Positions 451 through 48,932 of a DNA stretch of 64,000 nt are shown piece after piece; the stretch's first letter is position 1; each line of letters starts with the position of its first letter. The notes below the pieces were generated by a model. It had not been told where the DNA came from, searched no databases, and worked only from the letters and a program-made list of their open reading frames with translations. This stretch comes from Macrostomum lignano (lineage: Eukaryota). The DNA is taken from contig NIVC01002766.1 in NCBI GenBank assembly GCA_002269645.1, positions 78,331 through 142,330 of the forward strand, read 5' to 3'. Made by a program: the position numbers and the translations under genes.

Positions 451-3400
451 TCAATTGAGCACTACAGCAGGGTCTGCGACCGCCTTCGAATTGCCTTCGG
501 CAGCAGCCGCGGCGGCCAAGCCGGCCCTGCGACTCATCTCCTCAATCGAGTAGGTGCTCGTCAGCTCGTTGTAGAGCTCATCCAGCCCAACTTCCTGGTC
601 AGTGGCTTCGCCTTGGCTCTCGCTGGAGTCACCTCTGCCCAATGAGTTTGCTTTCGATTTCGCTGCCGCCTTGGCTACCGCAACTGCGGTGGTGGCGACG
701 GCTGCACCGGCGGACGTCTTGCCGGCTTTCAGTGCGGTTCGACCCGGTGCAGCTGCGGCAGACGTTGTCGAGTTCGCAGCCATTGTCAGCGGAGTTAAGG
801 AGCGCCGCCTGGGTGGCTCCGGCTTTTGCTGCTGCTTGGGCGTCAGTCTGCCGGCTGGAGTCTGCCGACTAGCTGTCGGATTCGGCGTCCGGGCCTGTCG
901 GTTTGGCGACGTCCGACTGCTGCTGCCGCGGGCGTCGGTCTTGGACAGAGGCTTCAGTCGGTGTTGCTGCTGCTGCTGCTGCTGGCAACTGCTGGACCGG
1001 CGTCGTTTCACCAGCTTCTCGGCTGCCGGACTAAACAGAGCAACCTCGGGCGTTGTGCAGCCCTGCGCTCTGGCCCACTGCTCCGCCGTTCGACCGGTCC
1101 GTTCGTCAGTTTTAGACACAGATGCGTGGCCCTCGATGGCCAGCAGCGAAGCGCTTTCGGTGAAGCCGTTCTTAGCGGCAATCAGCATGGCTGTGAAGCC
1201 TTCCTTGTTCACGCGGTCAATGTCGAGACCGAGGCGTCGGAAACATTTGATTAGTATGCCGATGCCAGTGTCGTTGCCAACTCTGGCGCAGTGCATCAGG
1301 GGCGTGTTACCTGCGAATTAATGCATAAGAGAGGGATTGTTTTCATGTGGGAGCGGTGGTAAACCATCCAGGTAATTCAAGTGTGAGCTGTGGTAGAGCA
1401 TCCAGGTGATTCAAGTGTGAGCTGTGGTAAACCATCCAGGTGATTTAAGTGTGAGCTGGTGATTCAATTGTGAGCTATGGTAAACCATCCAGGTAATTCA
1501 AGTGTGAGCTCTGGTAGAGCATCCAGGTGATTCAAGTTTGAGCTGTGGTAGAGCATCCAGGTGATTCAAGTTTGAGCTGTGGTAGAGCATCCAGGTGATT
1601 CAAGTTTGAGCTGTGGTAGAGCATCCAGGTGATTCAAGTGTGAGCTGTGGTAGAGCATCCAGGTGATTCAAGTGTGAGCTGTGGTAGAGCATCCAGGTGA
1701 TTCAAGTGTGAGCTGTGGTAGAGCATCCAGGTGATTCAAGTGTGAGCTGTGGTAGAGCATCCAGGTGATTCAAGTGTGAGCTGTGGTAGAGCATCCAGGT
1801 GATTCAAGTGTGAGCGGTGGTAAACCATCCAGGTGATTCAATTGTGAGCTATGGTAAACCATCCAGGTGATTCAATTGTGAGCTATGGTAAACCATCCAG
1901 GTGATTCAAGTGTGAGCTGTGGTAGAGCATCCAGGTGATTCAATTGTGAGCTATGGTAAACCATCCAGGTGATTCAATTGTGAGCTATGGTAAACCATCC
2001 AGGTGATTCAATTGTGAGCTATGGTAAACCATCCAGGTGATTCAATTGTGAGCTATGGTAAACCATCCAGGTGATTCAATTGTGAGCTGTGGTAAACCAT
2101 CCAGGTGATTCAATTGTGAGCTGTGGTAAACCATCCAGGTAATTCAAGTGTGAGCTGTGGTAGAGCATCCAGGTGATTCAAGTGTGAGCTGTGGTAAACC
2201 ATCCAGGTGATTCAATTGTGAGCTATGGTAAACCATCCAGGTGATTCAATTGTGAGCTGTGGTAAACCATCCAGGTGATTCAATTGTGAGCTATGGTAAA
2301 CCATCCAGGTGATTCAATTGTGAGCTATGGTAAACCATCCAGGTGATTCAATTGTGAGCTATGGTAAACCATCCAGGTGATTCAATTGTGAGCTGTGGTA
2401 AACCATCCAGGTGATTCAATTGTGAGCTGTGGTAAACCATCCAGGTAATTCAAGTGTGAGCTCTGGTAGAGCATCCAGGTGATTCAAGTTTGAGCTGTGG
2501 TAGAGCATCCAGGTGATTCAAGTTTGAGCTGTGGTAGAGCATCCAGGTGATTCAAGTTTGAGCTGTGGTAGAGCATTCAGGTGATTCAAGTTTGAGCTGT
2601 GGTAGAGCATCCAGGTGATTCAAGTGTGAGCTGTGGTAGAGCATCCAGGTGATTCAAGTGTGAGCTGTGGTAGAGCATCCAGGTGATTCAAGTGTGAGCT
2701 GTGGTAGAGCATCCAGGTGATTCAAGTGTGAGCTGTGGTAGAGCATCCAGGTGATTCAAGTGTGAGCGGTGGTAAACCATCCAGGTGATTCAATTGTGAG
2801 CTATGGTAAACCATCCAGGTGATTCAATTGTGAGCTATGGTAAACCATCCAGGTAATTCAATTGTGAGCTATGGTAAACCATCCAGGTAATTCAATTGTG
2901 AGCTATGGTAAACCATCCAGGTGATTCAATTGTGAGCTATGGTAAACCATCCAGGTGATTTAAGTGTGAGATCTGGTAAATCATCCAGGTGATTTAAGTG
3001 TGAGCTGGTGATTCAAGTGTGAGCTGTGGTAAACGATCCATGTGATTCAAGTGTGAGCTGTGGTAGAGCAACTAACTCTAGACTCTAATTAGAAGTTGAA
3101 TACGTCTCTAGTCCAATGGAAACTTTTTCAAATGACAACAAAATTCTAGCTAAGGTGTCTTTAAAAGCACCCTATAAAAAAGCAATTCCATCGCAGTTAA
3201 TGACTCGGCTTCCGCTGCTAATTCCTAAGCTAGAGATGTCACATGACATTGCGTGCCAGGTGAATCCAATTTTTTAAGAGGAGCGCACCCGATTGCCTAT
3301 AGTTATTTGGGACAAGATCACGCATTTACTGACAAATCTCGTTGTAGAATACTGTCCGGCACTTTTTCAAATCAGCCGGATCGGTAGCCTCTCAATCAGC

Positions 3401-6400
3401 TGGATCGGTAGCCTCTCAATCAGCTGGATCGGTAGCCTCTCAATCAGCTGGATCGGTAGCCTCTCAATCAGCTGGATCGGTAGCCTCTCAATCAGCTGGA
3501 TCGGTAGCCTCTCAATCAGCTGGATCGGTAGCCTCTCAATCAGCTGGATCGGTAGCCTCTCCAATCAGCTGGATCGGTAGCCTCTCAATCAGCTGGATCG
3601 GTAGCCTCTCCAATCAGCTGGATCGGTAGCCTCTCCAATCAGCTAGATCGGTAGCCTCTCCAATCAGCTGGATCCGTAGCCTCTCCAATCAGCTGGATCG
3701 GTAGCCTCTCCAATCAGCTGGATCGGTAGCCTCTCCAATCAGCTAGATCGGTAGCCTCTCTAATCAGCTAGATTGGTAGCCTCTCCAATCAGCTGGATCG
3801 GTAGCCTCTCCAACCAGCTGGATCGGTAGCCTCTCCAACCAGCTGGATCGGTAGCCTCTCCAACCAGCTGGATCGGTAGCCTCTCCAATCAGCTGGATCG
3901 GTAGCCTCTCCAATCAGCTAGATCGGTAGCCTCTCCAATCAGCTAGATCGGTAGCCTCTCCAATCAGCTGGATCGGTAGCCTCTCCAATCAGCTAGATCG
4001 GTAGCCTCTCCAATCAGCTGGATCGGTAGCCTCTCCAATCAGCTGGATCGGTAGCCTCTCCAATCAGCTGGATCAGTAGCCTCTCCAATCAGCTGGATCG
4101 GTAGCCTTTCCAATCAGCTAGATCGGTAGCCTCTCCAATCAGCTAGATCGGTAGCCTCTCCAATCAGCTAGATCGGTAGCCTCTCCAATCAGCTAGATCG
4201 GTAGCCTCTCCAATCAGCTGGATCGGTAGCCTCTCCAATCAGCTGGATCGGTAGCCTCTCCAACCAGCTGGATCGGTAGCCTCTCCAACCAGCTGGATCG
4301 GTAGCCTCTCCAATCAGCTGGATCGGTAGCCTCTCCAATCAGCTGGATCGGTAGCCTCTCCAATCAGCTGGATCGGTAGCCTCTCCAATCAGCTGGATCG
4401 GTAGTCTCTCCAATCAGCTGGATCGGTAGCCTCTCCAATCAGCTAGATCGGTAGCCTCTCCAATCAGCTGGATCGATAGCCTCTCCAATCAGCTGGATCG
4501 GTAGCCTCTCCAATCAGCTGGATTGGTAGCCTCTCCAATCAGCTGGATCGATAGCCTCTCCAATCAGCTGGATTGGTAGCCTCTCCAATCAGCTGGATCG
4601 GTAGCCTCTCCAATCAGCTGGATCGATAGCCTCTCCAATCAGCTGGATCGGTAGCCTCTCCAATCAGCTGGATCGGTAGCCTCTCCAATCAGCTGGATCG
4701 ATAGCCTCTCCAATCAGCTGGATCGGTAGCCTCTCCAATCAGCTAGATCGGTAGCCTCTCCAATCAGCTGGATCGATAGCCTCTCCAATCAGCTGGATCG
4801 GTAGCCTCTCCAATCAGCTGGATTGGTAGCCTCTCCAATCAGCTGGATCGGTAGCCTCTCCAACCAGCTGGATCGGTAGCCTCTCCAACCAGCTGGATCG
4901 GTAGCCTCTCCAACCAGCTGGATCGGTAGCCTCTCCAATCAGCTAGATCGGTAGCCTCTCCAATCAGCTGGATCGGTAGCCTCTCCAATCAGCTGGATCG
5001 GTAGCCTCTCCAATCAGCTGGATCGGTAGCCTCTCCAATCAGCTGGATCGGTAGCCTCTCCAATCAGCTGGATCGGTAGCCTCTCCAATCAGCTGGATCG
5101 GTAGCCTCTCCAATCAGCTGGATTGGTAGCCTCTCCAATCAGCTGGATCGGTAGCCTCTCCAATCAGCTAGATCGGTAGCCTCTCCAATCAGCTAGATCG
5201 GTAGCCTCTCCAATCAGCTGGATCGATAGCCTCTCCAATCAGCTGGATCGGTAGCCTCTCCAATCAGCTGGATTGGTAGCCTCTCCAATCAGCTGGATCG
5301 ATAGCCTCTCCAATCAGCTGGATCGGTAGCCTCTCTAATCAGCTAGATCGGTAGCCTCTCCAATCAGCTGGATCGATAGCCTCTCCAATCAGCTGGATCG
5401 GTAGCCTTTCCAATCAGCTGGATCGGTAGCCTCTCCAATCAGCTGGATCGGTAGCCTCTCCAATCAGCTGGATCGGTAGCCTCTCCAATCAGCTGGATCG
5501 GTAGCCTCTCCAATCAGCTGGATCGGTAGCCTCTCCAATCAGCTGGATCGGTAGCCTCTCCAATCAGCTGGATCGGTAGCCTCTCCAATCAGCTGGATCG
5601 GTAGCCTCTCCAATCAGCTGGATCGGTAGCCTCTCCAATCAGCTGGATCGGTAGCCTCTCCAATTAGCTGGATCGGTAGCCTCTCCAATCAGCTGGATCG
5701 GTAGCCTCTCCAACCAGCTGGATCGGTAGCCTCTCAATCAGCTGGATCGGTAGCCTCTCCAATCAGCTGGATCGGTAGCCTCTCCAATCAGCTGGATCGG
5801 TAGCCTCTCCAATCAGCTGGATCGATAGCCTCTCCAATCAGCTGAATCGGTAGCCTCTCCAATCAGCTGGATCGGTAGCCTCTCCAATCAGCTGGATCGG
5901 TAGCCTCTCCAATCAGCTGGATCGGTAGCCTCTCCAATCAGCTGGATCGGTAGCCTCTCCAATCAGCTGGATCGGTAGCCTCTCCAATCAGCTAGATCGA
6001 TAGCCTCTCCAACCAGCTGGATCGGTAGCCTCTCTAATCAGCTGGATCGGTAGCCTCTCGAATCAGCTAGATCGGTAGCCTCTCCAATCAGCTGGATCGG
6101 TAGCCTCTCCAATCAGCTGGATCGGTAGCCTCTCGAATCAGCTGGATCGGTAGCCTCTCCAATCAGCTGGATCGATAGCCTCTCCAATCAGCTGGATCGG
6201 TAGCCTCTCCAATCAGCTGGATCGGTAGCCTCTCCAATCAGCTGGATCGATAGCCTCTCCAATCAGCTGGATCGGTAGCCTCTCCAATCAGCTGGATCGG
6301 TAGCCTCTCCAATCAGCTGGATCGATAGCCTCTCCAATCAGCTGGATCGGTAGACTCTCCAATCAGCTGGATCGGTAGCCTCTCCAATCAGCTGGATCGG

Positions 6401-9400
6401 TAGCCTCTCCAATCAGCTGGATCGGTAGCCTCTCCAATCAGCTAGATCGGTAGCCTCTCCAATCAGCTAGATCGATAGCCTCTCCAATCAGCTAGATCGG
6501 TAGCCTCTCCAATCAGCTGGATCGGTAGCCTCTCCAATCAGCTGGATCGGTAGCCTCTCCAATCAGCTAGATCGATAGCCAAATAACCAGACCAATACCA
6601 CCTCACCGTCCTTATCCGGCAGCTCCGGGTCCACATTGTGACGCACCAGCAGTCGCACAACATCATTATGCCGCATCTCGCAGGCGTAGCTCAGTGCCGT
6701 CCTCCCGGAGTCGTCCTGATAGTTTGGCTGAGCGCCGTACGCCAGCAGCATCTGCATAATTCTCTGGCGACACTTTTCCTCCTGTAGAAGTTTTTTTGAA
6801 GTTTCAGATGTTTAAGTGGCATTCAAGTGCTTCATTCCTTTTTAATTGTTTTATCAAACCCAGTTTATCCGGAAAACCCTGTTTACATGTACACAAATAT
6901 AGGGGCGCCAGCACCAGGGGCGCCAGCACCAGGGGCGCCAGCACCAGGGGCGCCAGCACCAGGGGCGCCAGCACCAGGGGCGCCAGCACCAGGGGCGCCA
7001 GCACCAGGGGCGCCAGCACCAGGGGCGCCAGCACCAGGGGCGCCAGCACCAGGGGCGCCAGCACCAGGGGCGCCAGCACCAGGGGCGCCAGCACCAGGGG
7101 CGCCAGCACCAGGGGCGCCAGCACCTGGGGCGCCAGCACCAGGGGCGCCAGCACCAGGGGCGCCAGCACCAGGGGCGCCAGCACCAGGGGCGCCAGCACC
7201 AGGGGCGCCAGCACCAGGGGCGCCAGCACCAGGGGCGCCAGCACCAGGGCGCCAGCACCAGGGGCGCCAGCACCAGGGGCGCCAGCACCAGGGGCGCCAG
7301 CACCAGGGGCGCCAGCACCAGGGGCGCCAGCACCAGGGGCGCCAGAACCAAGGGCGCCAGCACCAGGGGCGCCAGCACCAAGGGCGCCAGCACCTGGGGG
7401 GCCAAAGCCACTGCAAAGGGCGCACTAAAGCTAGTCAGCGCCAGGTGAAGGGAACAGTGAGTTTTTCGAATCAATTTTTGTAATAGTTCAAGTGTCCTTG
7501 ATAAGTCAAACAGTAATAAATTGACACCTTTGAGCAGTATACTCAAGCCGGGTGAAAATTCAAAGTTTAACTTTGACTTGCCTATCACAATAGCAATTGA
7601 AATTGTCAATGTCGAGATTTACATGTAGAAATCGTTGATAAAATCAATTAAGGCAGAGGCGAAACTGCAGGTAGATGCTGACTGACACATTCATCAACCC
7701 TTTCTGCACTACGAGAGCGTATTAGGAGTTCACAGAGAGCTTCTTAGCTGATCACCTGTGACAGGTGTGGTGAGGGAGAGGAACTAAAGTACACGTTGAC
7801 AGGAGATTTTTACAAAAAATCGAGAGAAAAATCTGAGATGAAGAAACCGCGTCAGCTGAGCAGGATGACACGGGGCTCACGGATGCTACAGGCTTAATGA
7901 GCGACAGGCAGGTGAACTCCTGGTCAGCTTATACAGTTGCACTCTTGCCTGCAAGCAACAGTATAGGCTGATCCGTTCGACTCAAATTGCTTGTTTTTCG
8001 TGGCCTATCATTTTTCTGCTGGCAATTTTTTGTTCAATTTCTTGAGCAAGTGAGGATAAGATATGAAAAAGGAGGGGAAGATAGGAGAAAGAAGAGAGGA
8101 TGGGGGAGAAGGAAGTGGAGGGGAGATGAGGGGGATCGAGAGGGAGATGAGGGGGATCGAGAGGGAGATGAGGGGGATCGAGAGGGAGATGAGGGGGATC
8201 GAGAGGGAGATGAGGGGGATCGAGAGGGAGATGAGGGGGATCGAGAGGGAGATGAGGGGGGTCGAGAGGGAGATGAGGGGGATCGAGAGGGAGATGAGGG
8301 GGATCGAGAGGGAGATGAGGGGGATCGAGAGGGAGATGAGGGGGATCGAGAGGGAGATGAGGGGGATCGAGAGGGAGATGAGGGGGATCGAGAGGGAGAT
8401 GAGGGGGATCGAGAGGGAGATGAGGGGGATCGAGAGGGAGATGAGGGGGATCGAGAGGGAGATGAGGGGGATCGAGAGGGAGATGAGGGGGATCGAGAGG
8501 GAGATGAGGGGGATCGAGAGGGAGATGAGGGGGATCGAGAGGGAGATGAGGGGGATCGAGAGGGAGATGAGGGGGATCGAGAGGGAGATGAGGGGGATCG
8601 AGAGGGAGATGAGGGGGATCGAGAGGGAGATGAGGGGGATCGAGAGGGAGATGAGGGGGATCGAGAGGGAGATGAGGGGGATCGAGAGGGAGATGAGGGG
8701 GATCGAGAGGGAGATGAGGGGGATCGAGAGGGAGATGAGGGAGATCGAGAGGGAGATGAGGGGGATCGAGAGGGAGATGAGGGGGATCGAGAGGGAGATG
8801 AGGGGGATCGAGAGGGAGATGAGGGGGATCGAGAGGGAGATGAGGGGGATCGAGAGGGAGATGAGGGGGATCGAGAGGGAGATGAGGGGGATCGAGAGGG
8901 AGATGAGGGGGATCGAGAGGGAGATGAGGGGGATCGAGAGGGAGATGAGGGGGGTCGAGAGGGAGATGAGGGGGATCGAGAGGGAGATGAGGGGGATCGA
9001 GAGGGAGATGAGGGGGATCGAGAGGGAGATGAGGGGATCGAGAGGGAGATGAGGGGGATCGAGAGGGAGATGAGGGGGATCGAGAGGGAGATGAGGGGAT
9101 CGAGAGGGAGATGAGGGGGATCGAGAGGGAGATGAGGGGATCGAGAGGAAGATGAGGGGGATCGAGAGGGAGATGAGGGGGATCGAGAGGGAGATGAGGG
9201 GGATCGAGAGGGAGATGAGGGGGATCGAGAGGGAGATGAGGGGGATCGAGAGGGAGATGAGGGGGATCGAGAGGGAGATGAGGGGGATCGAGAGGGAGAT
9301 GAGGGGGATCGAGAGGGAAATGAGGGGACAGGGAAAGGATGGGGAGAGGAGGGAGAGGAGAGGGAGAAGGGAGAGGAGGGGAGAAGGGAGAGGAGAGTTC

Positions 9401-13789: not shown

Positions 13790-16127
13790 TCACCTGTCGG
13801 TTTTATCCGCCCCAGTAGCACCAGAAGAATCCGCCGACACAAGCGCCATAGCGGCAGTATAAACGCTAGTAAAAGAATAGCCTTCAGCTCCGAGCATGTG
13901 GCTATCGTCTAGAAAGTACTCAATGTACTTTAAATGGCAGAGCAGAGCCGGCTGGCCGGAGGTGGCCACAACGAATGCCAGCACGGGCACCAGATCGTCG
14001 GCGCCGATTTCGCCGGCCCCGACGGCCGATCGCATCGCCGCTAAGGCGCTGTTCAGAGTGTCCTGCAACAGTTGGCACTTTGCCAAAGGCGTACCAGGCG
14101 AGGCGCACAGTCGGCGCAGTAGGTCGCGCGATTCCGACAACGGCGCTAAATCGGTTGTTAAACTGTCGAATCTTTGACCGACGCCGCACAGTTTAGCAAC
14201 GGATTCTAACTGAGAGGAGACCTGACAGTCTGCCTGTTTGTCCCCTGCTACTTCGATCATGACAGCGGCCAGTCTGCTGAGATGAGGCCGCAGTACGATG
14301 GCCAGTCGGGCCAGGGCGCACGACTCCACCCGGGGGAGAGCAGGCGGCCAGACAGCAGCGCGGAGCACGCGGCCACCTCGTGACTGGCTAATCCGCCATC
14401 GCTGCCGCCGCCGCCGCAGAGAAGACAGGCGGCCGGAGCCAGCCGACGCAACAGACGACAGGCGACGCGGCCGACTCTGGCTGAGGAATCGTCGCGATCG
14501 GCGTCAAGCAGCAGACTGTCCGTCAGGCTCAATAGTTCAACGTCGGGAGCCTCGACAGAGTCGGCAGGGGTTGGCGGCGCTACGGACAGCCGATTGGCCA
14601 GCCGGTCGGAGAATGCGGCAATAAAAGCAGCCAGTGGGTGGTCGGGAATGGACAGCACGTACTGCAGGCGGGCAGGCGGCTGGCCGGCGGATTTCTGGTA
14701 CAGCTGATCCCGGTACAGCACCAGGTAGTCGAACTCGCTGCACCGGCAGTACAGGGTGCGCAGCTCGGCGGCATCGATGGCCTTTTCCTTGAAGGGGGTG
14801 GGGGCACTGAATCTTATCGCCTCTGACACCGAATCTGATCGCCTCTGACACCGAATCTGATCGCCTCTGACACTGAATCTTATCGCCTCTGACACCGAAT
14901 CTTATCGCCTCTGACACTGAATCTTATCGCCTCTGACACTGAATCTTATCGCCTCTGACACTGAATCTTATCGCCTCTGACACCGAATCTTATCGCCTCT
15001 GACAACGAATCTTATCGCCTCTGACACCGAATCTCAGCACACTTGACACCGAATCTTATCGTCTCTGACACCGAATCTCAGCACACCTGACACCAAATCT
15101 TATGACACCTGACACCGAATCTCAGCACACCTGACACCGAATCTGATCACACCTGACACCGAAGCTCATCACACCTGACACCGAATCTGATCACACCTGG
15201 CACCGAATCTCATCACACCTGACACCGAATCTCATCACACCTGACACCGAAGCTCATCACACCTGACACCGAATCTGATCACACCTGACACCGAATCTGA
15301 TCACACCTGACACCGAATCTCATCACACCTGACACCGAATCTGATCACACATGACACCGAATCTCATCACACCTGACACCGAATCTTATCCTAGCAATAA
15401 TTATCAAACACTGACTGACACAAAGGAAAATATCACAGAATCCTTAAAGCCAAACCTCATCAGACTCCACAGGTCCGTCATCATATTCGAATACCTCCGT
15501 ATGCAGCTGAAACAGGCGGCTACAGTCGGTCCGTTTAGCCAGCAGATCATCCTGCAGAGCCTGTTCAAAAGCCGCCTGTTTCGGCTTAGCCAACTGCAAA
15601 TTCTCTTCTATTCGGCGTTGCAAAGCCAGGTGTAAATTAACCCGGCGTGGGTCACCTTTGGGCAGGGCGCTGGTCCTAGCCAGATGGGCGCTGTAGAGCC
15701 GCCTGTTCAGCTCCATCGCTTCTTGCATGGGGGATTTACGCGGGCCAAGATAGGCTGGAGCTGGAGGAATTGGAGAAGAGGCAGTACCCGCAAACTGCGC
15801 CGGAGTCTGGGCCGCTGCTTGATGAGGCGGCGGCTTACCCGGTTGCTGGGGTGTCCGATTATTCATACCAGGAGGGGCGGCATTTAATAACGCGTCGCTT
15901 CGTTCTAAACACAATTTCATCAATCGCATCAACTTCCGCTGCTCATCCAACTGTTGAGCTGATAATTGAGCAACTGGGACAGCCTGAGAGGCGGCAGCAG
16001 CAGCTGAAGCAACAGCCGCAGCCAGGACCTGCTGCATGCAGGCTAAATAAGGGAAATAGCATCGTTCGCTTTGGCCTTGTTCGTCCTGACGGAGAACGTC
16101 TAGGACTGCCGTCACGGCCGTCTGTGA
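13790..16127 (-). CDS. VPS9D1: VPS9 domain-containing protein 1-like (Rab5-family GEF); exons ~15456(or 15495)-16127 and 13790-14787; one apparent 1-nt frameshift near 14330-14370
   Basis: C-terminal VPS9 motif GADDLVPVLAFVV...GAEGYSFTS. The segments RRIEENLQLAK and VLSIPDHPLA match recalled VPS9D1 (RQMMENLVIAK, LLSLPDHPIA). Acceptor CCCCCTTCAAG|GAA is phase 0. There is no genomic ATG at the N-terminus. Confidence 0.8.
14807..15385. repeat. 22-bp minisatellite in two subtypes (CTGACACCGAATCTTATCGCCT / CTGACACCGAATCTCATCACAC), ~26 copies, VPS9D1 intron
   Basis: Direct periodicity, with a gradient from one subtype to the other. Confidence 0.95.
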
Positions 16128-16246
16128 CTGCAGCGGAATTTTTTAATCAAATCAAAATTTGCGGTATAATAAGTTATTCTTTTACGCCAATAATAGTTCC
16201 AATCCAAAGAGCACTGCATCTTGAGAACCTTTCCGGGAGTCAATCA

Positions 16247-17650
16247 TCTAGATAAACTTTCCTAGAAACCGTTATGTAGATAAACTTTCCTAGAATCTGT
16301 CATCTAGAAAACTTTTCCTAGAATCAGTCATCTAGAGACCTTTTCCTAGAATCTGTCATCTAGAGAACTTTTCCTAGAATCAGTCATCTAGAGAACTTTT
16401 CCTAGAATCTGTCATCTAGAGAACTTTTCCTAGAATCAGTCATCTGGAGAACTTTTCCTAGAGTCAGTCATCTAGAGAACTTTTCCTAGAATCAGTCATC
16501 TGGAGAACTTTTCCTAGAATCAGTCATCTAGAGAACTTTTCCTAGAATCAGTCATCTGGAGAACTTTTCCTAGAATCAGTCATCTAGAGAACTTTTCCTA
16601 GAATCTGTCATCTAGAAAACTTTTCCTAGAATCAGTCATCTAGAGACCTTTTCCTAGAATCTGTCATCTAGAGAACTTTTCCTAGAATCAGTCATCTAGA
16701 GAACTTTTCCTAGAATCAGTCATCTAGAGAACTTTTCCTAGAATCAGTCATCTGGAGAACTTTTCCTAGAATCAGTCATCTAGAAAACTTTTCCTAGAAT
16801 CAGTCATCTAGAGACCTTTTCCTAGAATCTGTCATCTAGAGAACTTTTCCTAGAATCAGTCATCTAGAGAACTTTTCCTAGAATCTGTCATCTAGAGAAC
16901 TTTTCCTAGAATCAGTCATCTGGAGAACTTTTCCTAGAGTCAGTCATCTAGAGAACTTTTCCTAGAATCAGTCATCTGGAGAACTTTTCCTAGAATCAGT
17001 CATCTAGAGAACTTTTCCTAGAATCAGTCATCTGGAGAACTTTTCCTAGAATCAGTCATCTAGAGAACTTTTCCTAGAATCTGTCATCTAGAAAACTTTT
17101 CCTAGAATCAGTCATCTAGAGACCTTTTCCTAGAATCTGTCATCTAGAGAACTTTTCCTAGAATCAGTCATCTAGAGAACTTTTCCTAGAATCAGTCATC
17201 TAGAGAACTTTTCCTAGAATCAGTCATCTAGAGAATCTTTCCTAGAATCAGTCATCTAGAGACCTTTTCCTAGAATCTGTCATCTAGAGAATCTTTCCTA
17301 GAATCAGTCATCTAGAGACCTTTTCCTAGAATCTGTCATCTAGAGAATCTTTCCTAGAATCAGTCATCTAGAGACCTTTTCCTAGAATCTGTCATCTAGA
17401 GAATCTTTCCTAGAATCAGTCATCTAGAGACCTTTTCCTATAATCAATCATCTAGAGAATTCTTTCCTAGAATCAATAATCTAGAGAACCTTTCCTAGAA
17501 TCCATCATCTAGAACTTTTCCTAGAATCCACCATCTAGAGAATTCTTTCCTAGAATCAGTAATCTAAAGAACTTTTCCTAGAATCAATCATCTAGAAAAT
17601 CATTCCAAGAATCTGTCATCTATACAACCATTCCTAGAATCAATAAAGAA
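16247..17650. repeat. 28-bp minisatellite (TCTAGAGAACTTTTCCTAGAATCAGTCA), ~50 copies, between the RPL13 3' end and the VPS9D1 5' end
   Basis: Direct periodicity, degenerate at both ends; includes an internal block duplication of roughly 480 nt. Confidence 0.97.
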
Positions 17651-17877: not shown

Positions 17878-18501
17878 TCACTTCTTCTCCTTCTCAGCCT
17901 GCTCGGCTTTCTTCTTGCGCAGTCCGTCGAGCCGCTTGTTCGCCCGAGCCTGTCGGATAGCGTGGAAGGCGTGGAACTTCTTGTCGTCCTCCGATTGGAC
18001 GCGAGCCTTCACGCGGCGCAGTCGGCGGCCCGGAGCCACCACAGGCGGCAGCGGACGCTGTACAACAGACCGAAGTTCCTCCTCCGAAGCTTCGCCAGCC
18101 TTCGGCGCCTTGGGATTCTTCGGGAATAGGATCAGCTTGCCGCGGTAGGCCTTCAATCGCTGGGCATTGCGCTGCAGACTCTCGGCTGAGCGATTCTTGC
18201 GCCGATGATCAACGGCGATGCCGATGGTTTGGGCGAGTCGGCGATTGATGCCGGCGGCCTTGAGCTCGTCCAGGCTGAAGCCGCGGCCGGGGCGGACACG
18301 CATGTTGTACCTGATGGTCTGGCAGCGGACCACCGGGCGAAGAGGCCCGTTCACTGGCCGGGGCGCTATAAGGCGCGCCTTCTCGACGCGAGCTTTACGA
18401 CGGCGCTCCTTGCGAGCGGGCTGGTTGAACCAGGTGCGAACAAAGCGCTGCCAGTCCTTGTGGAAGTGGGCATTCGGTATGATGTTCTTGCGCTTCACCA
18501 T
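17878..18501 (-). CDS. RPL13: 60S ribosomal protein L13 (eL13)
   Basis: [31 protein letters not shown]...[14 protein letters not shown]...[19 protein letters not shown] is unmistakably eL13. There is an acceptor just upstream of the ATG and an AATAAA on the minus strand near 17790. Confidence 0.98.
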
Positions 18502-34600: not shown

Positions 34601-37600
34601 CACAATTCTCAGCTTCATCTTGACACATTTTTAAGCGCCATCCTGACACATTTCTCAGCTTCATTCTGACACATTTCTGAGCTTCATTCTGACACATTTC
34701 TGAGCTTCATTCTGACACATTTCTCAGCTTCATTCTGACTCATTTCTCAGCTTCATTCTGACACATTTCTCAGCTTCATTCTGACACATTTCTCAGCTTC
34801 ATTCTGACACATTTCTCAGCTTCATTCTGACACATTTCTCAGCTTTATTCCGACACATTTCTCAGCTTCATTCTGACACGTTTCTGAGCTTCATCCTGAC
34901 ACAATTCTCAGCTTCATCTGGACACATTTTTAAGCGCCATCCTGACACATTTCTCAGCTTCATTCTGACACATTTCTCAGCTTCATTCTGACACATTTCT
35001 CAGCTTCATTCTGACACATTTTTCAGCTTCATTCTGACACATTTCTCAGCTTCATTCTGACACATTTCTCAGCTTCATTCTGACACATTTCTCAGCTTCA
35101 TTCTGACACATTTCTCAGCTTTATTCCGACACATTTCTCAGCTTCATTCTGACACGTTTCTGAGCTTCATCCTGACACAATTCTCAGCTTCATCTGGACA
35201 CATTTTTAAGCGCCATCCTGACACATTTCTCAGCTTCATTCTGACACATTTCTCAGCTTCATTCTGACACATTTCTCAGCTTCATTCTGACACATTTTTC
35301 AGCTTCATTCTGACACATTTCTCAGCTTCATTCTGACACATTTTGCAGCTTCATTCTGACAAATTTCGCAGCTTCATTCTGATAAATTTCGCAGCTTCAT
35401 TCTGACACATTTCTGAGCTTCATTCTGACACATTTCTCAGCTTCATTCTGACACATTTCTGAGCTTCATTCTGACACATTTCTGAGCTTCATTCTGACAC
35501 ATTTTTCAGCTTCATTCTGACAAATTTCGCAGCTTCATTCTGACACATTTCTGAGCTTCATTCTGACACATTTCTCAGCTTCATTCTGACACATTTTCAG
35601 CTTCATTCTGACACATTTCTCAGCTTCATTCTGACACATTTCTCAGCTTCATTCTGACACATTTCTGAGCTTCATTCTGACACATTTCTCAGCTTCATTC
35701 TGACACATTTCTCAGCTTCATTCTGACACATTTCTCAGCTTCATCCTGACACATTTCTCAGCTTCATTCTGACACATTTCTCAGCTTCATTCTGACACAT
35801 TTTTCAGCTTCATTCTGACACATTTCTCAGCTTCATTCTGACACATTTCTCAGCTTCATTCTGACACATTTCTCAGCTTCATTCTGACACATTTCTCAGC
35901 TTCATCCTGACACCTTTTTAGCTTTATTCTGACAAATCTTTTATCGCCTTAACCCTGTGACACACTAACACGAGCGTAAAAGCAATCCTCCAATTATAAA
36001 TCAGCTCACTTTGACGATCTCAGCGTCAACCCTCGCCTTCTCCTCCGTCGCGGTGTCCAGCAGGGCCTCCCGCTCAGCCAGGCGTTTGTCCTTCTCAGAC
36101 AGGCTGTCGCGCATCAGGCGCAGCTCCTCCTGGAGATCTTTGCATCGGCGCTCGAGATTTTCGGCCAGCCGGCGAGAGTCCAACAGTTCGGCGCTGGGTT
36201 CGGGTTCGGCGGCGGCGGCTGCCGTAGCGGCTGCGGCAGCGGCGTCGGCTTCCAGTTGACAGATTCGCTCTTTGGCATTGTCGAGTTCGCATTGGATGTT
36301 GGTGAGCTCGCCTTCGAGTCGGAGTTGATTGTCCGCGGCGATCACCTGCTGGGCTTCCAGCTGCTCGTGCAGGTCCGCAACTTTGCGTTGATTGGCCTGG
36401 AGATGTTGGGGATTTTGTTGAATTGAGTTGTGGGAGTATGAGTGCTTTGAATATTCTGAGCTGCACAATGGGGATATTCCAAACTACACAATGGGATATT
36501 CCAAGCTACACAATGGGATATTCTAAGCTACACAATGGGATATTCCAAGCTACACAATGGGATATTCTAAGCTACACAATGGGATATTCCAAACTACACA
36601 ATGGGATATTCCAAGCTACACAATGGGATATTCCAAGCTACACAATGGGATATTCCAAGCTACACAATGGGATATTCCAAGCTACACAATGGGATATTCT
36701 AAGCTACACAATGGGATATTCTAAGCTACACCATGGGATATTCCAAGCTACACAATGGGATATTCTAAGCTACACAATGGGATATTCTAAGCTACACAAT
36801 GGGATATTCCAAGCTACACAATGGGGATATTCTAAGCTACACAATGGGATATTCCAAGCTACACAATGAAGATATTCCAAACTACACAATGGGATATTCC
36901 AAGCTACACAATGGGATATTCCAAGCTACACAATGGGATATTCGAAGCTACACAATGGGATATTCCAAGCTACACAATGGGATATTCCAAGCTACACAAT
37001 GAAGATATTCCAAGCTACACAATGAAGATATTCCAAGCTACACAATGGGATATTCCAAGCTACACAATGGGATATTCCAAGCTACACAATGGGATATTCC
37101 AAGCTACACAATGAAGATATTCCAAGCTACACAATGAAGATATTCCAAGCTACACAATGGGATATTCCAAGCTACACAATGGGATATTCCAAGCTACACA
37201 ATGGGATATTCCAAGCTACACAATGGGATATTCCAAGCTACACAATGGGATATTCCAAGCTACACAATGGGATATTCCAAGCTACACAATGGGATATTCC
37301 GAGCTACACAATGGGATATTCCAAGCTACACAATGGGATATTCCAAGCTACACAATGGGATATTCCAAGCTACACAATGAAGATATTCCAAGCTACACAA
37401 TGAAGATATTCCAAGCTACACAATGGGATATTCCAAGCTACACAATGGGATATTCCAAGCTACACAATGGGATATTCCAAGCTACACAATGGGATATTCC
37501 AAGCTACACAATGGGATATTCCAAGCTACACAATGGGATATTCCAAGCTACACAATGGGATATTCTAAGCTACACAATGGGATATTCCAAACTACACAAT

Positions 37601-40600
37601 GGGATATTCCAAGCTACACAATGGGATATTCCAAGCTACACAATGGGATATTCCAAGCTACACAATGGGATATTCCAAGCTACACAATGGGATATTCTAA
37701 GCTACACAATGGGATATTCTAAGCTACACAATGGGATATTCCAAGCTACACAATGAAGATATTCCAAGCTACACAATGGGATATTCCAAGCTACACAATG
37801 GGATATTCCAAGCTACACAATGGGATATTCCAAGCTACACAATGGGATATTCCAAGCTACACAATGGGATATTCCAAGCTACACAATGGGATATTCCAAG
37901 CTACACAATGGGATATTCCAAGCTACACAATGGGATATTCCAAGCTACACAATGGGATATTCCAAGCTACACAATGGGATATTCTAAGCTACACAATGGG
38001 ATATTCCAAACTACACAATGGGATATTCCAAGCTACACAATGGGATATTCCAAGCTACACAATGGGATATTCCAAGCTACACAATGGGATATTCCAAGCT
38101 ACACAATGGGATATTCCAAGCTACACAATGGGATATTCTAAGCTACACAATGGGATATTCTAAGCTACACAATGGGATATTCTAAGCTACACAATGGGAT
38201 ATTCTAAGCTACACAATGGGATATTCCAAGCTACACAATGGGGATATTCTAAGCTACACAATGGGATATTCCAAGCTACACAATGAAGATATTCCAAACT
38301 ACACAATGGGATATTCCAAGCTACACAATGGGATATTCCAAGCTACACAATGGTTATATTCCAAGCTACACAATGGGATATTCCAAGCTACACAATGGGA
38401 TATTCCAAGCTACACAATGGGATATTCCAAGCTACACAATGGGATATTCCAAGCTACACAATGGGATATTCCAAGCTACACAATGAAGATATTCCAAGCT
38501 ACACAATGGGATATTCCAAGCTACACAATGGGATATTCCAAGCTACACAATGGGATATTCCGAAGCTACACAATGGGATATTCCAAGCTACACAATGAAG
38601 ATATTCCAAGCTACACAATGAAGATATTCCAAGCTACACAATGGGATATTCCAAGCTACACAATGGGATATTCTAAGCTACACAATGGGATATTCCAAAC
38701 TACACAATGGGATATTCCAAGCTACACAATGGGATATTCCAAGCTACACAATGGGATATTCCAAGCTACACAATGGGATATTCCAAGCTACACAATGGGA
38801 TATTCTAAGCTACACAATGGGATATTCTAAGCTACACAATGGGATATTCCAAGCTACACAATGGGATATTCTAAGCTACACAATGGGATATTCTAAGCTA
38901 CACAATGGGATATTCCAAGCTACACAATGGGGATATTCTAAGCTACACAATGGGATATTCCAAGCTACACAATGGATATTCCAAGCTACACAATGGGATA
39001 TTCCAAGCTACACAATGGGATATTCCAAGCTACACAATGGTTATATTCCAAGCTACACAATGGGATATTCCAAACTACACAATGGGATATTCCAAGCTAC
39101 ACAATGGGATATTCCAAGCTACACAATGGGATATTCCAAGCTACACAATGGGATATTCCAAGCTACACAATGAAGATATTCCAAGCTACACAATGGGATA
39201 TTCCAAGCTACACAATGGGATATTCCAAGCTACACAATGGGATATTCCAAGCTACACAATGGGATATTCCAAGCTACACAATGAGATATTCCAAACTACA
39301 CAATGGGATATTCCAAACTACACAATGGGATATTCCAAACTACAAGCTCACCTTAGCCGCAGCATCGTACGCAGCCTTCAAGTCGGCCAGCTCAGCCAGG
39401 GCCTGATCTCTGGCAGCGCGTAATCCTTCAGCGAATTGGCGCTTCTCATTTAGCGCCGATTCGAATTCGGCGCGCGCTTCAGCTTGGCGCCGGTCGGCGT
39501 CCTCCATAGCGGCGGCGCAGCGCTCCCTGGTGTCGTGAGCCTCCTGACTGCCTGCTTGCCGGGCCAATTGAAGCTCTTCAACAGTGTGCGCCAGCTCGGC
39601 GGCCAGCTGATCCCGATCCTGCTCAAGGCAACGCTTCACTTCGTCTAGTTCGCGTTCTCGAGTTTCGAAGTTTTTGCGCGAATTAGCCAGCTCTGCTTTG
39701 ACCGACGCTAGGGCCGTTTTGTGCTCCTCGGCCTGCATAAGCAGCTCGGTTTGTAACTCTTTCACTCGTTCGTTGGCGCTGTCCAACTGCGATTCCACGA
39801 ACTTGTAGGCCTCTTGCATTTGTTCAATGAGCTGCAAGCGTGTGTTGTGTGTTGTGTATGGCTTAGTGACGTATGAGCCACACTTGCCCGGGTGACATGT
39901 TGGCGGCAGATAAAGTGGGATTTGCATCGAAGGAAGGAAGGGGAAACATTGTGAAGGGAGATTGTGAAGGGAGAGAGAAGGTGATAAAGAGAGGGAGATA
40001 AAAGCGAGGGTAAAGATGGTGATGCGAGGGGAAAGATGATGGAAGGGAGGGGAAAGATAATGGAAGGAGGAAGATGATAGTAGGGGAAGAAGACCAACGG
40101 AGAGGAAAGATGGTAAAGGGAGGGGAAAGATGGTAAAGGGAGGGGAAAGATGGTAAAGGGAGGGGACAGATGGTAAAGTTAGGGGAAATATGGTAAAGGG
40201 AGGTGTAGTGAGCCGCTAGTTTATGGTTAGGCGTCGCCCTTGTCAGCTGTTCCCTCGCCTTCGCCCTGGGTTGCTGTCTGCCGCTGGTCAGCTTCCCGCC
40301 CCTCCCTTTCGTCTGTCTGCTGCTGCCCTTGGCCTGTTCTGGCCTTTTGCGTCTTTGTTCTCAGCCCTTAGCTTCTCTGCTGTGGGCTGTCTCTGTTTCG
40401 TTCCCGTCCCGTTTTCCTCTGTCATGTGAGCAAGTCACATGACAGACTCTGCGTTCTTCAAGTCCTAAAGTGCAGTAAACATGTTTACTGCACTCGTTGG
40501 CCCTGTTTACCGGGTGAGTCACGTGCTTTCGGACCCCTCCCTTCTCTAAGGAGAGGAGTGACTCATGTTGCTAAAAATAGCAACTGAGTCACAGCCGCGT

Positions 40601-48800: not shown

Positions 48801-48932
48801 AGCCCAGGTAAGATGGGATCCCCAGTCCTGAAGCATTTTACAGTGTGATTAAGCTGAGGTAGGATGGGATCCCCAGTCCTGAAGCATTTTACAGTGTGAT
48901 TAAGCCGAGGTAGGATGGGATCCCTAGTCCTG
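45816..48932. repeat. 51-bp tandem array (GTCCTGAAGCATTTTACAGTGTGATTAAGCTGAGGTAGGATGGGATCCCCA), ~61 copies, abutting the NUMA1 start
   Basis: Near-constant part plus a core with about four recurring variants; the last unit overlaps the first codons of NUMA1. Confidence 0.98.

What the first reader, a model, noticed from the sequence alone, without database searches (positions are those of the whole stretch)
16100..16160. VPS9D1-like gene has no genomic start ATG; a trans-spliced leader AUG would supply it in frame
Seen: the conserved N-terminal region (AVTAVLDVLRQDEQGQSERCYFPYL) has no Met; the first ATG lies inside the conserved helix. A CAG acceptor at 16128-16129 (and a second CAG 6 nt downstream) is followed by TCA CAG ACG GCC GTG, in frame with the ORF. 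The nearest upstream ATG (~16220) gives no phase-0 donor. Known: flatworm spliced leaders end in AUG, and this AUG can act as initiator (shown in Schistosoma). Inference: this gene obtains its start codon from the SL RNA.
Basis: partly seen in the sequence, partly recalled or inferred. Interest (0 to 1): 0.75.

Follow-up and report, generated by a model that had tools for sequence, protein, structure and literature searches.

The report
Spliced-leader AUG starts flatworm VPS9D1 gene
In the flatworm Macrostomum lignano, a conserved membrane-trafficking gene (VPS9D1-like) has no start codon of its own and most likely takes the AUG at the end of the trans-spliced leader RNA; this mechanism is already known in flatworms, so the finding corrects an annotation and does not describe a new phenomenon.

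Summary
The window is Macrostomum lignano assembly Mlig_3_7, contig NIVC01002766.1. On the minus strand, a two-exon VPS9D1 orthologue opens just after an in-frame TAA (16145-16143). There is no in-frame ATG before 16037-16035, and that ATG lies inside helix 2 of a conserved N-terminal three-helix domain.

Orthologues in molluscs, a nemertean and a coelacanth begin with Met only 2-3 residues upstream of the equivalent position. The published M. lignano spliced leader ends in ...TTGCATG. Joined to any of three in-frame CAG sites (junction after 16131, 16128 or 16122), its AUG is the first AUG of the mRNA and is in frame.

GenBank models of the two intact paralogues are 5'-partial and start exactly at CAG 16130. 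A same-strand RPL13 gene lies about 320 unique bases upstream, beyond a satellite, which fits the published operon criteria.

The assembly was polished with RNA-seq. It carries leader-derived bases at two RPL13 junctions, and probably here too (CTG at 16133-16131, where the older ML2 assembly encodes Gln).

I could not reach any leader-bearing read. Verdict: a new member of a known kind, of modest interest.

The parts
16143..16145 (-). In-frame stop codon (TAA) that closes the reading frame upstream. No ATG lies between it and the conserved N-terminus.
16131..16133 (-). Assembled as CTG. Probably a genomic CAG acceptor whose middle base (16132) was overwritten by the U of the leader AUG during RNA-seq polishing. 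Most likely trans-splice junction: 16131|16130.
   Evidence: ML2-assembly proteins P0001 and P0007 start QQSQTAV, so they have Gln here. The GenBank CDS of the paralogues starts at the next base. Pilon polishing used RNA-seq. Analogous leader footprints occur at RPL13 junctions.
16128..16130 (-). In-frame CAG. In the assembled sequence, CTGCAG fits the published motif [T/C]TNCAG.
16122..16124 (-). Third in-frame CAG, a possible minor alternative acceptor (junction 16122|16121).
15456..16130 (-). Exon 1 of the VPS9D1-like gene. It encodes the N-terminal three-helix domain and the central region. The donor GT is at 15455-15454.
   Evidence: tblastn of P0005 against the window
16035..16037 (-). 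First in-frame genomic ATG. It lies inside helix 2 of the conserved N-terminal domain. One ML2 gene model (P0006, MQQVL...) uses it as its start.
14788..15455 (-). Intron 1, mostly a 22-bp tandem array (14805-15390).
13790..14787 (-). Exon 2, with the VPS9 domain at about 13841-14095 and the stop codon at 13792-13790. This copy lacks one C in a C-run near 14337 compared with both paralogues, which shifts the frame.
16217..17642 (.). 28-bp satellite (about 51 copies) that fills most of the interval between RPL13 and the acceptor. The paralogues have 35 and 20 copies.
16134..16216 (-). Unique AT-rich sequence directly upstream of the acceptor (...ttttgatttgattaaaaaattccg). This is the 3' end of the presumed outron.
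17878..18501 (-). Upstream same-strand, intronless RPL13 (eL13) gene. AATAAA lies at 17794-17789. It is the presumed first gene of a two-gene transcription unit.

Best explanation
The VPS9D1-like gene has no initiation codon in the genome. Its pre-mRNA is probably made as the downstream part of an RPL13 -> VPS9D1 transcription unit, with an outron consisting of about 320 unique bases plus a variable 28-bp satellite. The pre-mRNA is trans-spliced to the 35-nt M. lignano spliced leader (...UUGCAUG) at a cluster of in-frame CAG acceptors. The most likely junction is 16131|16130, with 16128|16127 as the alternative. The 3'-terminal AUG of the leader then becomes the first AUG of the mRNA, 32 nt from the cap and in frame. 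It initiates a protein that begins M-Q-S-Q-T-A-V-T-A-V-L-D-V... (or M-S-Q-T-A-V...) and has a complete N-terminal three-helix domain.

Shown: the frame geometry, the absence of a genomic ATG, the homology of the N-terminal region, the 5'-partial evidence-based gene models that end at the acceptor, and the operon-like context.

Inferred: that leader-bearing transcripts exist at this junction, which junction is used, and that ribosomes initiate at the leader AUG.
For: 1. Organism and leader. The window is identical to Mlig_3_7 contig NIVC01002766.1. The leader is CGGTCTCTTACTGCGAAGACTCAATTTATTGCATG, and 30% of genes are trans-spliced (PMC8629364).

2. No genomic start. There is an in-frame TAA at 16145-16143, and the first in-frame ATG is at 16037-16035.

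3. The ATG-less stretch is coding. HMMER aligns query residues 7-290 with residues 10-281 of Pomacea VPS9D1, and similarly with squid, coelacanth and other proteins. hhalign of the first 87 residues against the orthologue N-termini gives probability 90.5% and E = 1.4e-6, with Mlig A4 matching Pomacea V8. The invariant Tyr residues of the E-A-Y-x-x-Y-L motif lie upstream of the internal Met.

4. Leader plus exon gives an uninterrupted ORF from the leader AUG for all three junctions, and that AUG is the first in the mRNA.

5. GenBank models PAA62346.1 and PAA72661.1 are 'partial'. They were built with RNA-seq and leader-read boundaries (TBONE). They start at the CAG equivalent to 16130, with no upstream exon. 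ML2 models start QQSQTAV, or at the same CAG (P0002).

6. Leader footprints. The assembly was polished with RNA-seq. It shows leader-derived bases exactly upstream of junctions: L001 has TTGCATG|CAGTTCC where the paralogues have TTTCCAG|CAGTTCC, and L005 has CATG|CAGCCGG where they have CCAG|CAGCCGG. Here Mlig_3_7 has CTG where ML2 encodes Gln, which is the minimal such footprint (position -2).

7. Context. RPL13 lies on the same strand. The repeat-adjusted distance is 321, 321 and 320 nt in the three paralogues, below the published 1-kb operon threshold.

8. Precedent. The flatworm leader AUG acts as initiator in S. mansoni (Cheng et al. 2006, as cited in PMC9851317 and PMC12582326). Macrostomum annotators treat the leader's ATG as a likely start codon (PMC10468722).
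Against: - I could not inspect any leader-bearing read, cDNA or N-terminal peptide. The protein collection holds no M. lignano transcript-derived sequences for this gene or for RPL13.
- As assembled, the favoured junction is preceded by TG, not AG. The argument that the T is a polishing artefact rests on a Gln in ML2-derived proteins and on analogy with RPL13.
- The published motif [T/C]TNCAG fits only the 16128 junction, and only in the assembled sequence.
- The leader AUG has a weak context (U at -3) and a short 32-nt leader.
- The copy in this window carries a one-base deletion in exon 2, so this particular locus may not make the full protein.
Confidence: 0.75

Rival explanations
1. Translation starts at the internal genomic AUG (16037-16035). 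The product would be a protein about 32 residues shorter, and the open frame upstream would be an untranslated leader that happens to be in frame with the spliced-leader AUG.
For: One ML2 gene model (P0006) starts at MQQVL. About one third of leader AUGs are in frame by chance (28% in S. mansoni, quoted in PMC9851317). The leader AUG context is weak, so leaky scanning could reach this AUG.
Against: The skipped 30 residues are homologous to helix 1 and the first part of helix 2 of VPS9D1 orthologues and include both invariant tyrosines. The frame is closed by a stop immediately upstream of the acceptor and open downstream of it. Orthologues start 2-3 residues before the equivalent of the acceptor. 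The internal AUG also has a poor context (U at -3, C at +4).
Confidence: 0.08
2. An undetected upstream exon supplies a genomic ATG by cis-splicing to the same acceptor. Candidates are the ATG at 16247 with the weak donor gca|GTGCTC, and the RPL13 start codon itself, which is followed by a consensus donor (ATG|GTGAAG, phase 0).
For: One search lists these phase-0 ATG...GT combinations. In parasitic flatworms, acceptors are often shared between cis- and trans-splicing (PMC12582326). One ML2 model (P0010) fuses RPL13 and VPS9D1.
Against: The RNA-seq-guided GenBank models of both intact paralogues have no upstream exon and are flagged partial. No ATG...GT[AG]AG phase-0 donor exists in the intergenic region. 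ATG 16247 lies in a degenerate satellite unit. The same ATGGTGAAG occurs in the RPL13 paralogues that have no VPS9D1 downstream, so it is explained by the Met-Val-Lys coding sequence. P0010 is a frame-shifted ab initio chimera.
Confidence: 0.05
3. A non-AUG codon initiates translation on an mRNA that is not trans-spliced. Candidates are the in-frame CUG at 16133-16131 (if the assembled T is real), ACG at 16121 and GUG at 16115.
For: These near-cognate codons are in frame. Non-AUG initiation is documented in organisms that use spliced leaders (PMC9851317).
Against: All have poor context. An mRNA that is not trans-spliced would carry out-of-frame upstream AUGs (16219, 16247) and many satellite-borne ATGs. 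The annotated transcripts end at the acceptor. ML2 encodes Gln, not Leu, at the CTG position.
Confidence: 0.04
4. The copy in this window is a pseudogene, so the question of its start codon does not arise for this locus. Only the paralogues on NIVC01001948.1 and NIVC01001069.1 are functional.
For: The window lacks one C (C5 instead of C6) near 14337 compared with both paralogues, which shifts the frame in exon 2. GenBank annotates only a 156-aa C-terminal fragment here (P0003).
Against: The difference is a homopolymer-length change in a PacBio-based assembly and could be an assembly error. The rest of the gene is 98-99% identical to the paralogues with no other disruption. The 5' end is identical in all three copies, so the start-codon conclusion applies to the gene family either way.
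Confidence: 0.25

Closest known systems
[quoted passage not shown]
   Same: A flatworm leader that ends in AUG. The acceptor is placed so that the AUG is in frame. There is no usable genomic AUG upstream of conserved coding sequence.
   Different: The species is a free-living macrostomorph, not a parasitic trematode, and the leader sequence differs. Initiation was shown experimentally in Schistosoma and is only inferred here.
slORFs: reading frames created by spliced-leader addition (slORFfinder, PMC9851317)
   Same: The ORF exists only after the leader is joined to the exon.
   Different: slORFfinder calls them from leader-containing RNA-seq reads and ribosome footprints, and neither was available here. 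Many of the reported slORFs overlap annotated ORFs in other frames, whereas this one is the main conserved ORF.
Macrostomum lignano spliced-leader trans-splicing and operons (Ustyantsev & Berezikov 2021, PMC8629364; Wudarski et al. 2017, PMC5730564)
   Same: The gene is conserved and has a human homologue, which is the class enriched among trans-spliced genes. It lies downstream of another same-strand gene at a repeat-adjusted distance below 1 kb. Its annotated 5' end falls on a CAG.
   Different: Those papers do not discuss use of the leader AUG as a start codon. The trans-spliced status of this particular gene (Mlig015965) could not be looked up.
VPS9D1 (VPS9 domain-containing protein 1) family
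   Same: An N-terminal helical domain, a central conserved LSLTLQRKMxENL-like region and a C-terminal VPS9 domain. The best full-length matches are named VPS9D1 (squid, coelacanth, Lineus).
   Different: It is shorter (about 556 aa, against about 650-890) and has an Ala/Pro-rich linker. Identity is only 25-29%.

Membership tests
Spliced-leader trans-spliced gene of M. lignano | RNA-seq or cDNA reads carrying the 35-nt leader fused to the first exon | not testable with these tools
   No M. lignano transcript-derived sequences are in the searchable collections. No supplementary table lists Mlig015965.
Spliced-leader trans-spliced gene of M. lignano | Evidence-based transcript 5' boundary that coincides with a 3' splice acceptor | tested here: met
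   The GenBank 5'-partial CDS of both intact paralogues starts at the CAG equivalent to window 16130. The boundary-setting method uses leader-read peaks. The preceding AG is assembled as TG, which is probably a polishing artefact.
Spliced-leader trans-spliced gene of M. lignano | Acceptor motif [T/C]TNCAG at the junction (present at 44% of annotated sites) | tested here: inconclusive
   CTGCAG at 16133-16128 fits for junction 16128|16127. The favoured junction 16131|16130 would read CCGCAG, which does not fit at position 2.
M. lignano operon (Ustyantsev & Berezikov criteria) | Adjacent same-strand genes, the downstream one trans-spliced, with a repeat-adjusted intergenic distance below 1 kb | tested here: met
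   From the RPL13 stop codon to the acceptor is 1747 nt, of which 1426 nt is satellite, leaving 321 nt. The paralogues give 321 and 320 nt. The trans-spliced status of the downstream gene is inferred.
Spliced-leader-AUG-dependent ORF (Cheng et al. 2006 type) | The leader ends in AUG | tested here: met
   The published leader is ...TTGCATG. The ATG is conserved in the genus and across flatworms.
Spliced-leader-AUG-dependent ORF (Cheng et al. 2006 type) | The leader AUG is in frame with the conserved ORF, with no intervening stop | tested here: met
   this holds for all three candidate junctions.
Spliced-leader-AUG-dependent ORF (Cheng et al. 2006 type) | No genomic in-frame AUG upstream of conserved coding sequence, and the frame is closed upstream of the acceptor | tested here: met
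Spliced-leader-AUG-dependent ORF (Cheng et al. 2006 type) | Translation demonstrably initiates at the leader AUG | not testable with these tools
   This needs N-terminal proteomics, initiation ribosome profiling or reporter assays.
VPS9D1 | C-terminal VPS9 domain | tested here: met
   Pfam PF02204, E = 1.1e-14, residues 455-539 of P0005.
VPS9D1 | N-terminal helical domain and central region homologous to named VPS9D1 proteins | tested here: met
   HMMER stretches 7-290 against 10-281 and similar. The source names are VPS9 domain-containing protein 1. hhalign probability 90.5%.

The most novel reading that the evidence does not exclude
The leader-derived bases found just upstream of trans-splice junctions are TTGCATG in L001, CATG in L005 and the T at window 16132. 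In this reading they are real genomic changes, not RNA-seq polishing artefacts. They would have been written into individual paralogues by RNA- or cDNA-templated conversion from trans-spliced mRNAs. That would be a route by which leader sequence, including its AUG, becomes fixed in the genome.
Probability: 0.05. Interest if true: 0.7.

Novelty: new member of a known kind. Interest (0 to 1): 0.3.

Why it matters
It corrects the annotation of a conserved gene. The GenBank proteins PAA62346.1 and PAA72661.1 are labelled 'partial', but they are complete once the leader Met is added. One ML2 model that starts at the internal Met is truncated by about 32 residues.

It gives a concrete, testable case that the conserved 3' AUG of flatworm spliced leaders is needed as an initiator in Macrostomorpha, an early-branching free-living lineage. 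So far this use has been shown only in Schistosoma.

As a side result, it warns that the RNA-seq-polished Mlig_3_7 assembly can carry leader-derived bases that destroy acceptor AGs at trans-splice sites. This can mislead splice-motif analyses and gene prediction.

Tried and rejected
- Rfam scan of the whole window: no hit.
- Search for a spliced-leader RNA gene in the window: none.
- Bacterial-type promoter and terminator scan: not informative for a eukaryote.
- Direct RNA evidence through the protein and contig collections: no transcript-derived M. lignano proteins for this gene or for the highly expressed RPL13.
- Supplementary tables and full-text search for Mlig015965 or VPS9D1: nothing.
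- Hypothesis that GenBank boundaries are uniformly shifted by -3 because the ATG was kept on trimmed reads: rejected. RPL13 in L005 and in L001-L003 fits offset 0 only.
- Window-wide enrichment of the leader tail TTGCATG: none, with 5 matches found against 13 expected. The footprints are therefore local and rare, not a general feature of this window.
- Footprints at the methyltransferase and mitochondrial-carrier 5' ends of L004-L006: none seen.
- Single-sequence AlphaFold model of the N-terminus: only moderate confidence (pLDDT 63). I used it only for helix positions and did not use it for fold search.
Full report
**Source and gene**

The window is Macrostomum lignano. The exon-1 translation is 100% identical to UniRef A0A1I8IGN2. 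Locus L003, from GenBank assembly GCA_002269645.1 (Mlig_3_7), contig NIVC01002766.1, matches window 3790-24260 without a mismatch.

The gene lies on the minus strand and has two exons:
- Exon 1 is 16130/16127-15456.
- Intron 1 is 15455-14788 and is mostly a 22-bp tandem array.
- Exon 2 is 14787-13790.

Pfam finds a C-terminal VPS9 domain (E = 1.1e-14). An exhaustive HMMER search returns, as the best full-length relatives, proteins that their sources name VPS9 domain-containing protein 1 (Sepia, Latimeria, Lineus), together with unnamed mollusc proteins.

**The observation**

On the minus strand the frame reads TAA(16145-16143) AAA ATT CCG CTG CAG TCA CAG ACG GCC GTG....

- There is no in-frame ATG until 16037-16035.
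- The nearest upstream ATG (16219-16217) is out of frame.
- I enumerated every ATG...GT combination between the upstream gene and the acceptor. None is a phase-0 donor matching the species' consensus GT[AG]AG. Only weak ones exist, such as ATG 16247 with gca|GTGCTC, inside a degenerate satellite unit.

**Is the ATG-less stretch coding?**

Yes.

- HMMER aligns query residues 7-290 with residues 10-281 of the Pomacea protein, and similarly with others.
- An hhalign comparison of the first 87 residues with a profile of seven orthologue N-termini gives probability 90.5% and E = 1.4e-6. M. lignano A4 matches Pomacea V8.
- In the multiple alignment, the two invariant tyrosines (E-A-Y-x-x-Y-L) lie upstream of the internal Met. 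That Met falls on the conserved C-[IVM]-L column.
- A single-sequence AlphaFold model (pLDDT 63, used only for helix positions) predicts helices at residues 4-16, 24-47 and 57-82. This places the internal Met (residue 31) inside helix 2.
- Orthologues begin with Met only 2-3 residues before the position equivalent to the acceptor.

Nothing substantial is therefore missing upstream. Starting at the genomic ATG would delete helix 1 and part of helix 2.

**The leader**

M. lignano has one 35-nt spliced leader, CGGTCTCTTACTGCGAAGACTCAATTTATTGCATG. About 30% of genes are trans-spliced, and [T/C]TNCAG is the top acceptor motif (PMC8629364).

I joined the leader to the exon at each of three junctions, after 16131, 16128 or 16122. 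In every case the leader AUG is the first AUG of the mRNA, and it opens an uninterrupted frame to the end of exon 1. The products begin MQSQTAV..., MSQTAV... or MTAV....

**Annotation evidence**

Mlig_3_7 gene models were built from RNA-seq. Their 5' ends were set by peaks of leader-containing reads (the TBONE pipeline), and ORFs were called with TransDecoder (PMC5730564).

- The two intact paralogues (PAA62346.1 and PAA72661.1, loci L001 and L002) are labelled 'partial'. They have no upstream exon and start QSQTAV, at the CAG equivalent to window 16130.
- Models from the older ML2 assembly start QQSQTAV (P0001, P0007), or within the same CAG (P0002).
- One ML2 model that has to start with Met begins at the internal MQQVL (P0006).

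**Which junction?**

A transcript that starts at 16130 needs an AG at 16132-16131, but all three Mlig_3_7 copies read CTG there. Two facts suggest that the T is an artefact.

First, Mlig_3_7 re-used the PacBio data of ML2 and was polished with Pilon using RNA-seq as well as DNA reads. ML2-derived proteins have Gln (CAG or CAA) at this codon in two paralogues.

Second, leader-derived bases are visible in the assembly at other junctions:
- Upstream of RPL13, L001 reads TTGCATG|CAGTTCC where the window and L002 read TTTCCAG|CAGTTCC.
- In a second RPL13 family, L005 reads CATG|CAGCCGG where L004 and L006 read CCAG|CAGCCGG.

All of these changes run towards the leader's 3' end and sit exactly at the junction. 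CAG->CTG at position -2 is the smallest footprint of this kind. These figures are my judgement, not a computed result. The frame is the same for every junction.

If the footprint reading is right, it is also indirect evidence that leader-bearing reads cover this site.

**Context**

An intronless RPL13 gene (18501-17878, with AATAAA at 17794-17789) lies upstream on the same strand.

The interval to the acceptor is 1747 nt, of which 1426 nt is a 28-bp satellite. In L001 the figures are 1298 and 977 nt, and in L002 they are 878 and 558 nt. The unique part is therefore about 320 nt in all three copies. This meets the published operon criterion of a repeat-adjusted distance below 1 kb.

A chimeric ML2 model that fuses RPL13 and VPS9D1 (P0010) is weak additional support for a shared transcript.

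**Rivals**

- Initiation at the internal AUG would delete conserved structure.
- A cis-spliced upstream exon is not supported by the evidence-based models or by the donor enumeration.
- The RPL13 start codon is followed by a consensus donor (ATG|GTGAAG, phase 0). The same sequence occurs in RPL13 copies that have no VPS9D1 downstream, so it is explained by the Met-Val-Lys coding sequence.
- Near-cognate initiation would need an mRNA that is not trans-spliced and that carries many upstream AUGs.

Separately, the window's own copy lacks one C in a C-run near 14337, which shifts the frame in exon 2. GenBank annotates only a 156-aa tail here. I could not decide whether this is a real pseudogenising change or a homopolymer error.

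**Comparison with what is known, and verdict**

Use of the flatworm leader's terminal AUG as initiator was shown in S. mansoni. The AUG was in frame in 28% of trans-spliced transcripts, and more than 40 cDNAs required it (Cheng et al. 2006, as quoted in PMC9851317 and PMC12582326). Annotators of other Macrostomum genomes already treat the leader's ATG as a likely start codon (PMC10468722).

This case is therefore a new member of a known kind. Its value is a corrected gene model and a clean test case in a free-living, early-branching flatworm. I could not reach direct RNA or protein evidence with the available collections. My confidence in the mechanism is 0.75 and interest is 0.3.

Noticed in passing
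L001 8058-8064 (homologous to window 18522-18516); L005 9992-9995 (compared with L004 9995-9998 and L006): Single paralogues carry the 3' end of the spliced leader (TTGCATG or CATG) in place of the acceptor (TTTCCAG or CCAG), exactly upstream of the RPL13 first exon. The Mlig_3_7 assembly was polished with RNA-seq (PMC5730564), so these are most likely leader bases written into the assembly. They mark trans-splice junctions but destroy the acceptor AG in the reference.
   Followed up: partly
window 16132 (minus-strand T): All three Mlig_3_7 copies read CTG (Leu) here, where ML2-assembly proteins of two paralogues have Gln. This is probably the same kind of leader footprint (the U of AUG at position -2).
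   Followed up: partly
window ~14337 (C-run 14338-14334, minus strand): One C fewer than in both paralogues (C5 against C6). This shifts the frame in exon 2 of the VPS9D1-like gene, and GenBank annotates only a 156-aa C-terminal fragment in this contig. It is either a real pseudogene or a homopolymer assembly error.
   Followed up: partly
window 18501-18493: The RPL13 start codon is followed directly by a consensus 5' splice site (ATG|GTGAAG, phase 0), which mimics the leader's ATG|GTAAG. It is also present in RPL13 paralogues with no downstream VPS9D1, so it is probably just the Met-Val-Lys coding sequence.
   Followed up: partly
window 18518-18513; L004 9996-10001: Tandem CAGCAG acceptors lie upstream of both RPL13 families. 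The GenBank 5'-partial CDS starts differ by one codon between paralogues (210 against 211 aa), which suggests alternative trans-splice acceptors three bases apart.
   Followed up: partly
window 16217-17642; L001 8938-9914; L002 9357-9914: The 28-bp satellite between RPL13 and VPS9D1 has about 51, 35 and 20 copies in the three paralogous loci. The flanking unique sequence is nearly identical in all three.
   Followed up: yes
whole window (for example 3370-6580, 36451-39344, 45817-48932): About 24.7 kb (39%) of the window consists of minisatellite arrays with periods of 15-51 bp. They explain the strong local GC-skew blocks. The 891-aa ORF at 46034-48709 lies inside the 51-bp array (17 codons per unit) and is probably an artefact of the repeat.
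   Followed up: no
window 15862-15867, 15794, 15770, 15482: Paralogue-specific differences in exon 1: an in-frame 6-nt insertion (Met-Asn) unique to this copy, and F/L, I/L and D/N substitutions. These could serve as tags to assign reads to individual copies.
   Followed up: no
proteins P0010, P0006, P0002 (ML2 gene models): The older ML2 annotation has three flawed models of this gene: a frame-shifted RPL13-VPS9D1 fusion (P0010), a model truncated to the internal Met (P0006), and a model with a 2-nt frame disturbance at the 5' end (P0002).
   Followed up: partly
protein cluster of P0001: Two short ENA proteins (P0008, 56 aa; P0009, 40 aa) with unrelated AT-rich-looking sequences are listed as members of the 90%-identity cluster. 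This looks like a clustering artefact in the database.
   Followed up: no
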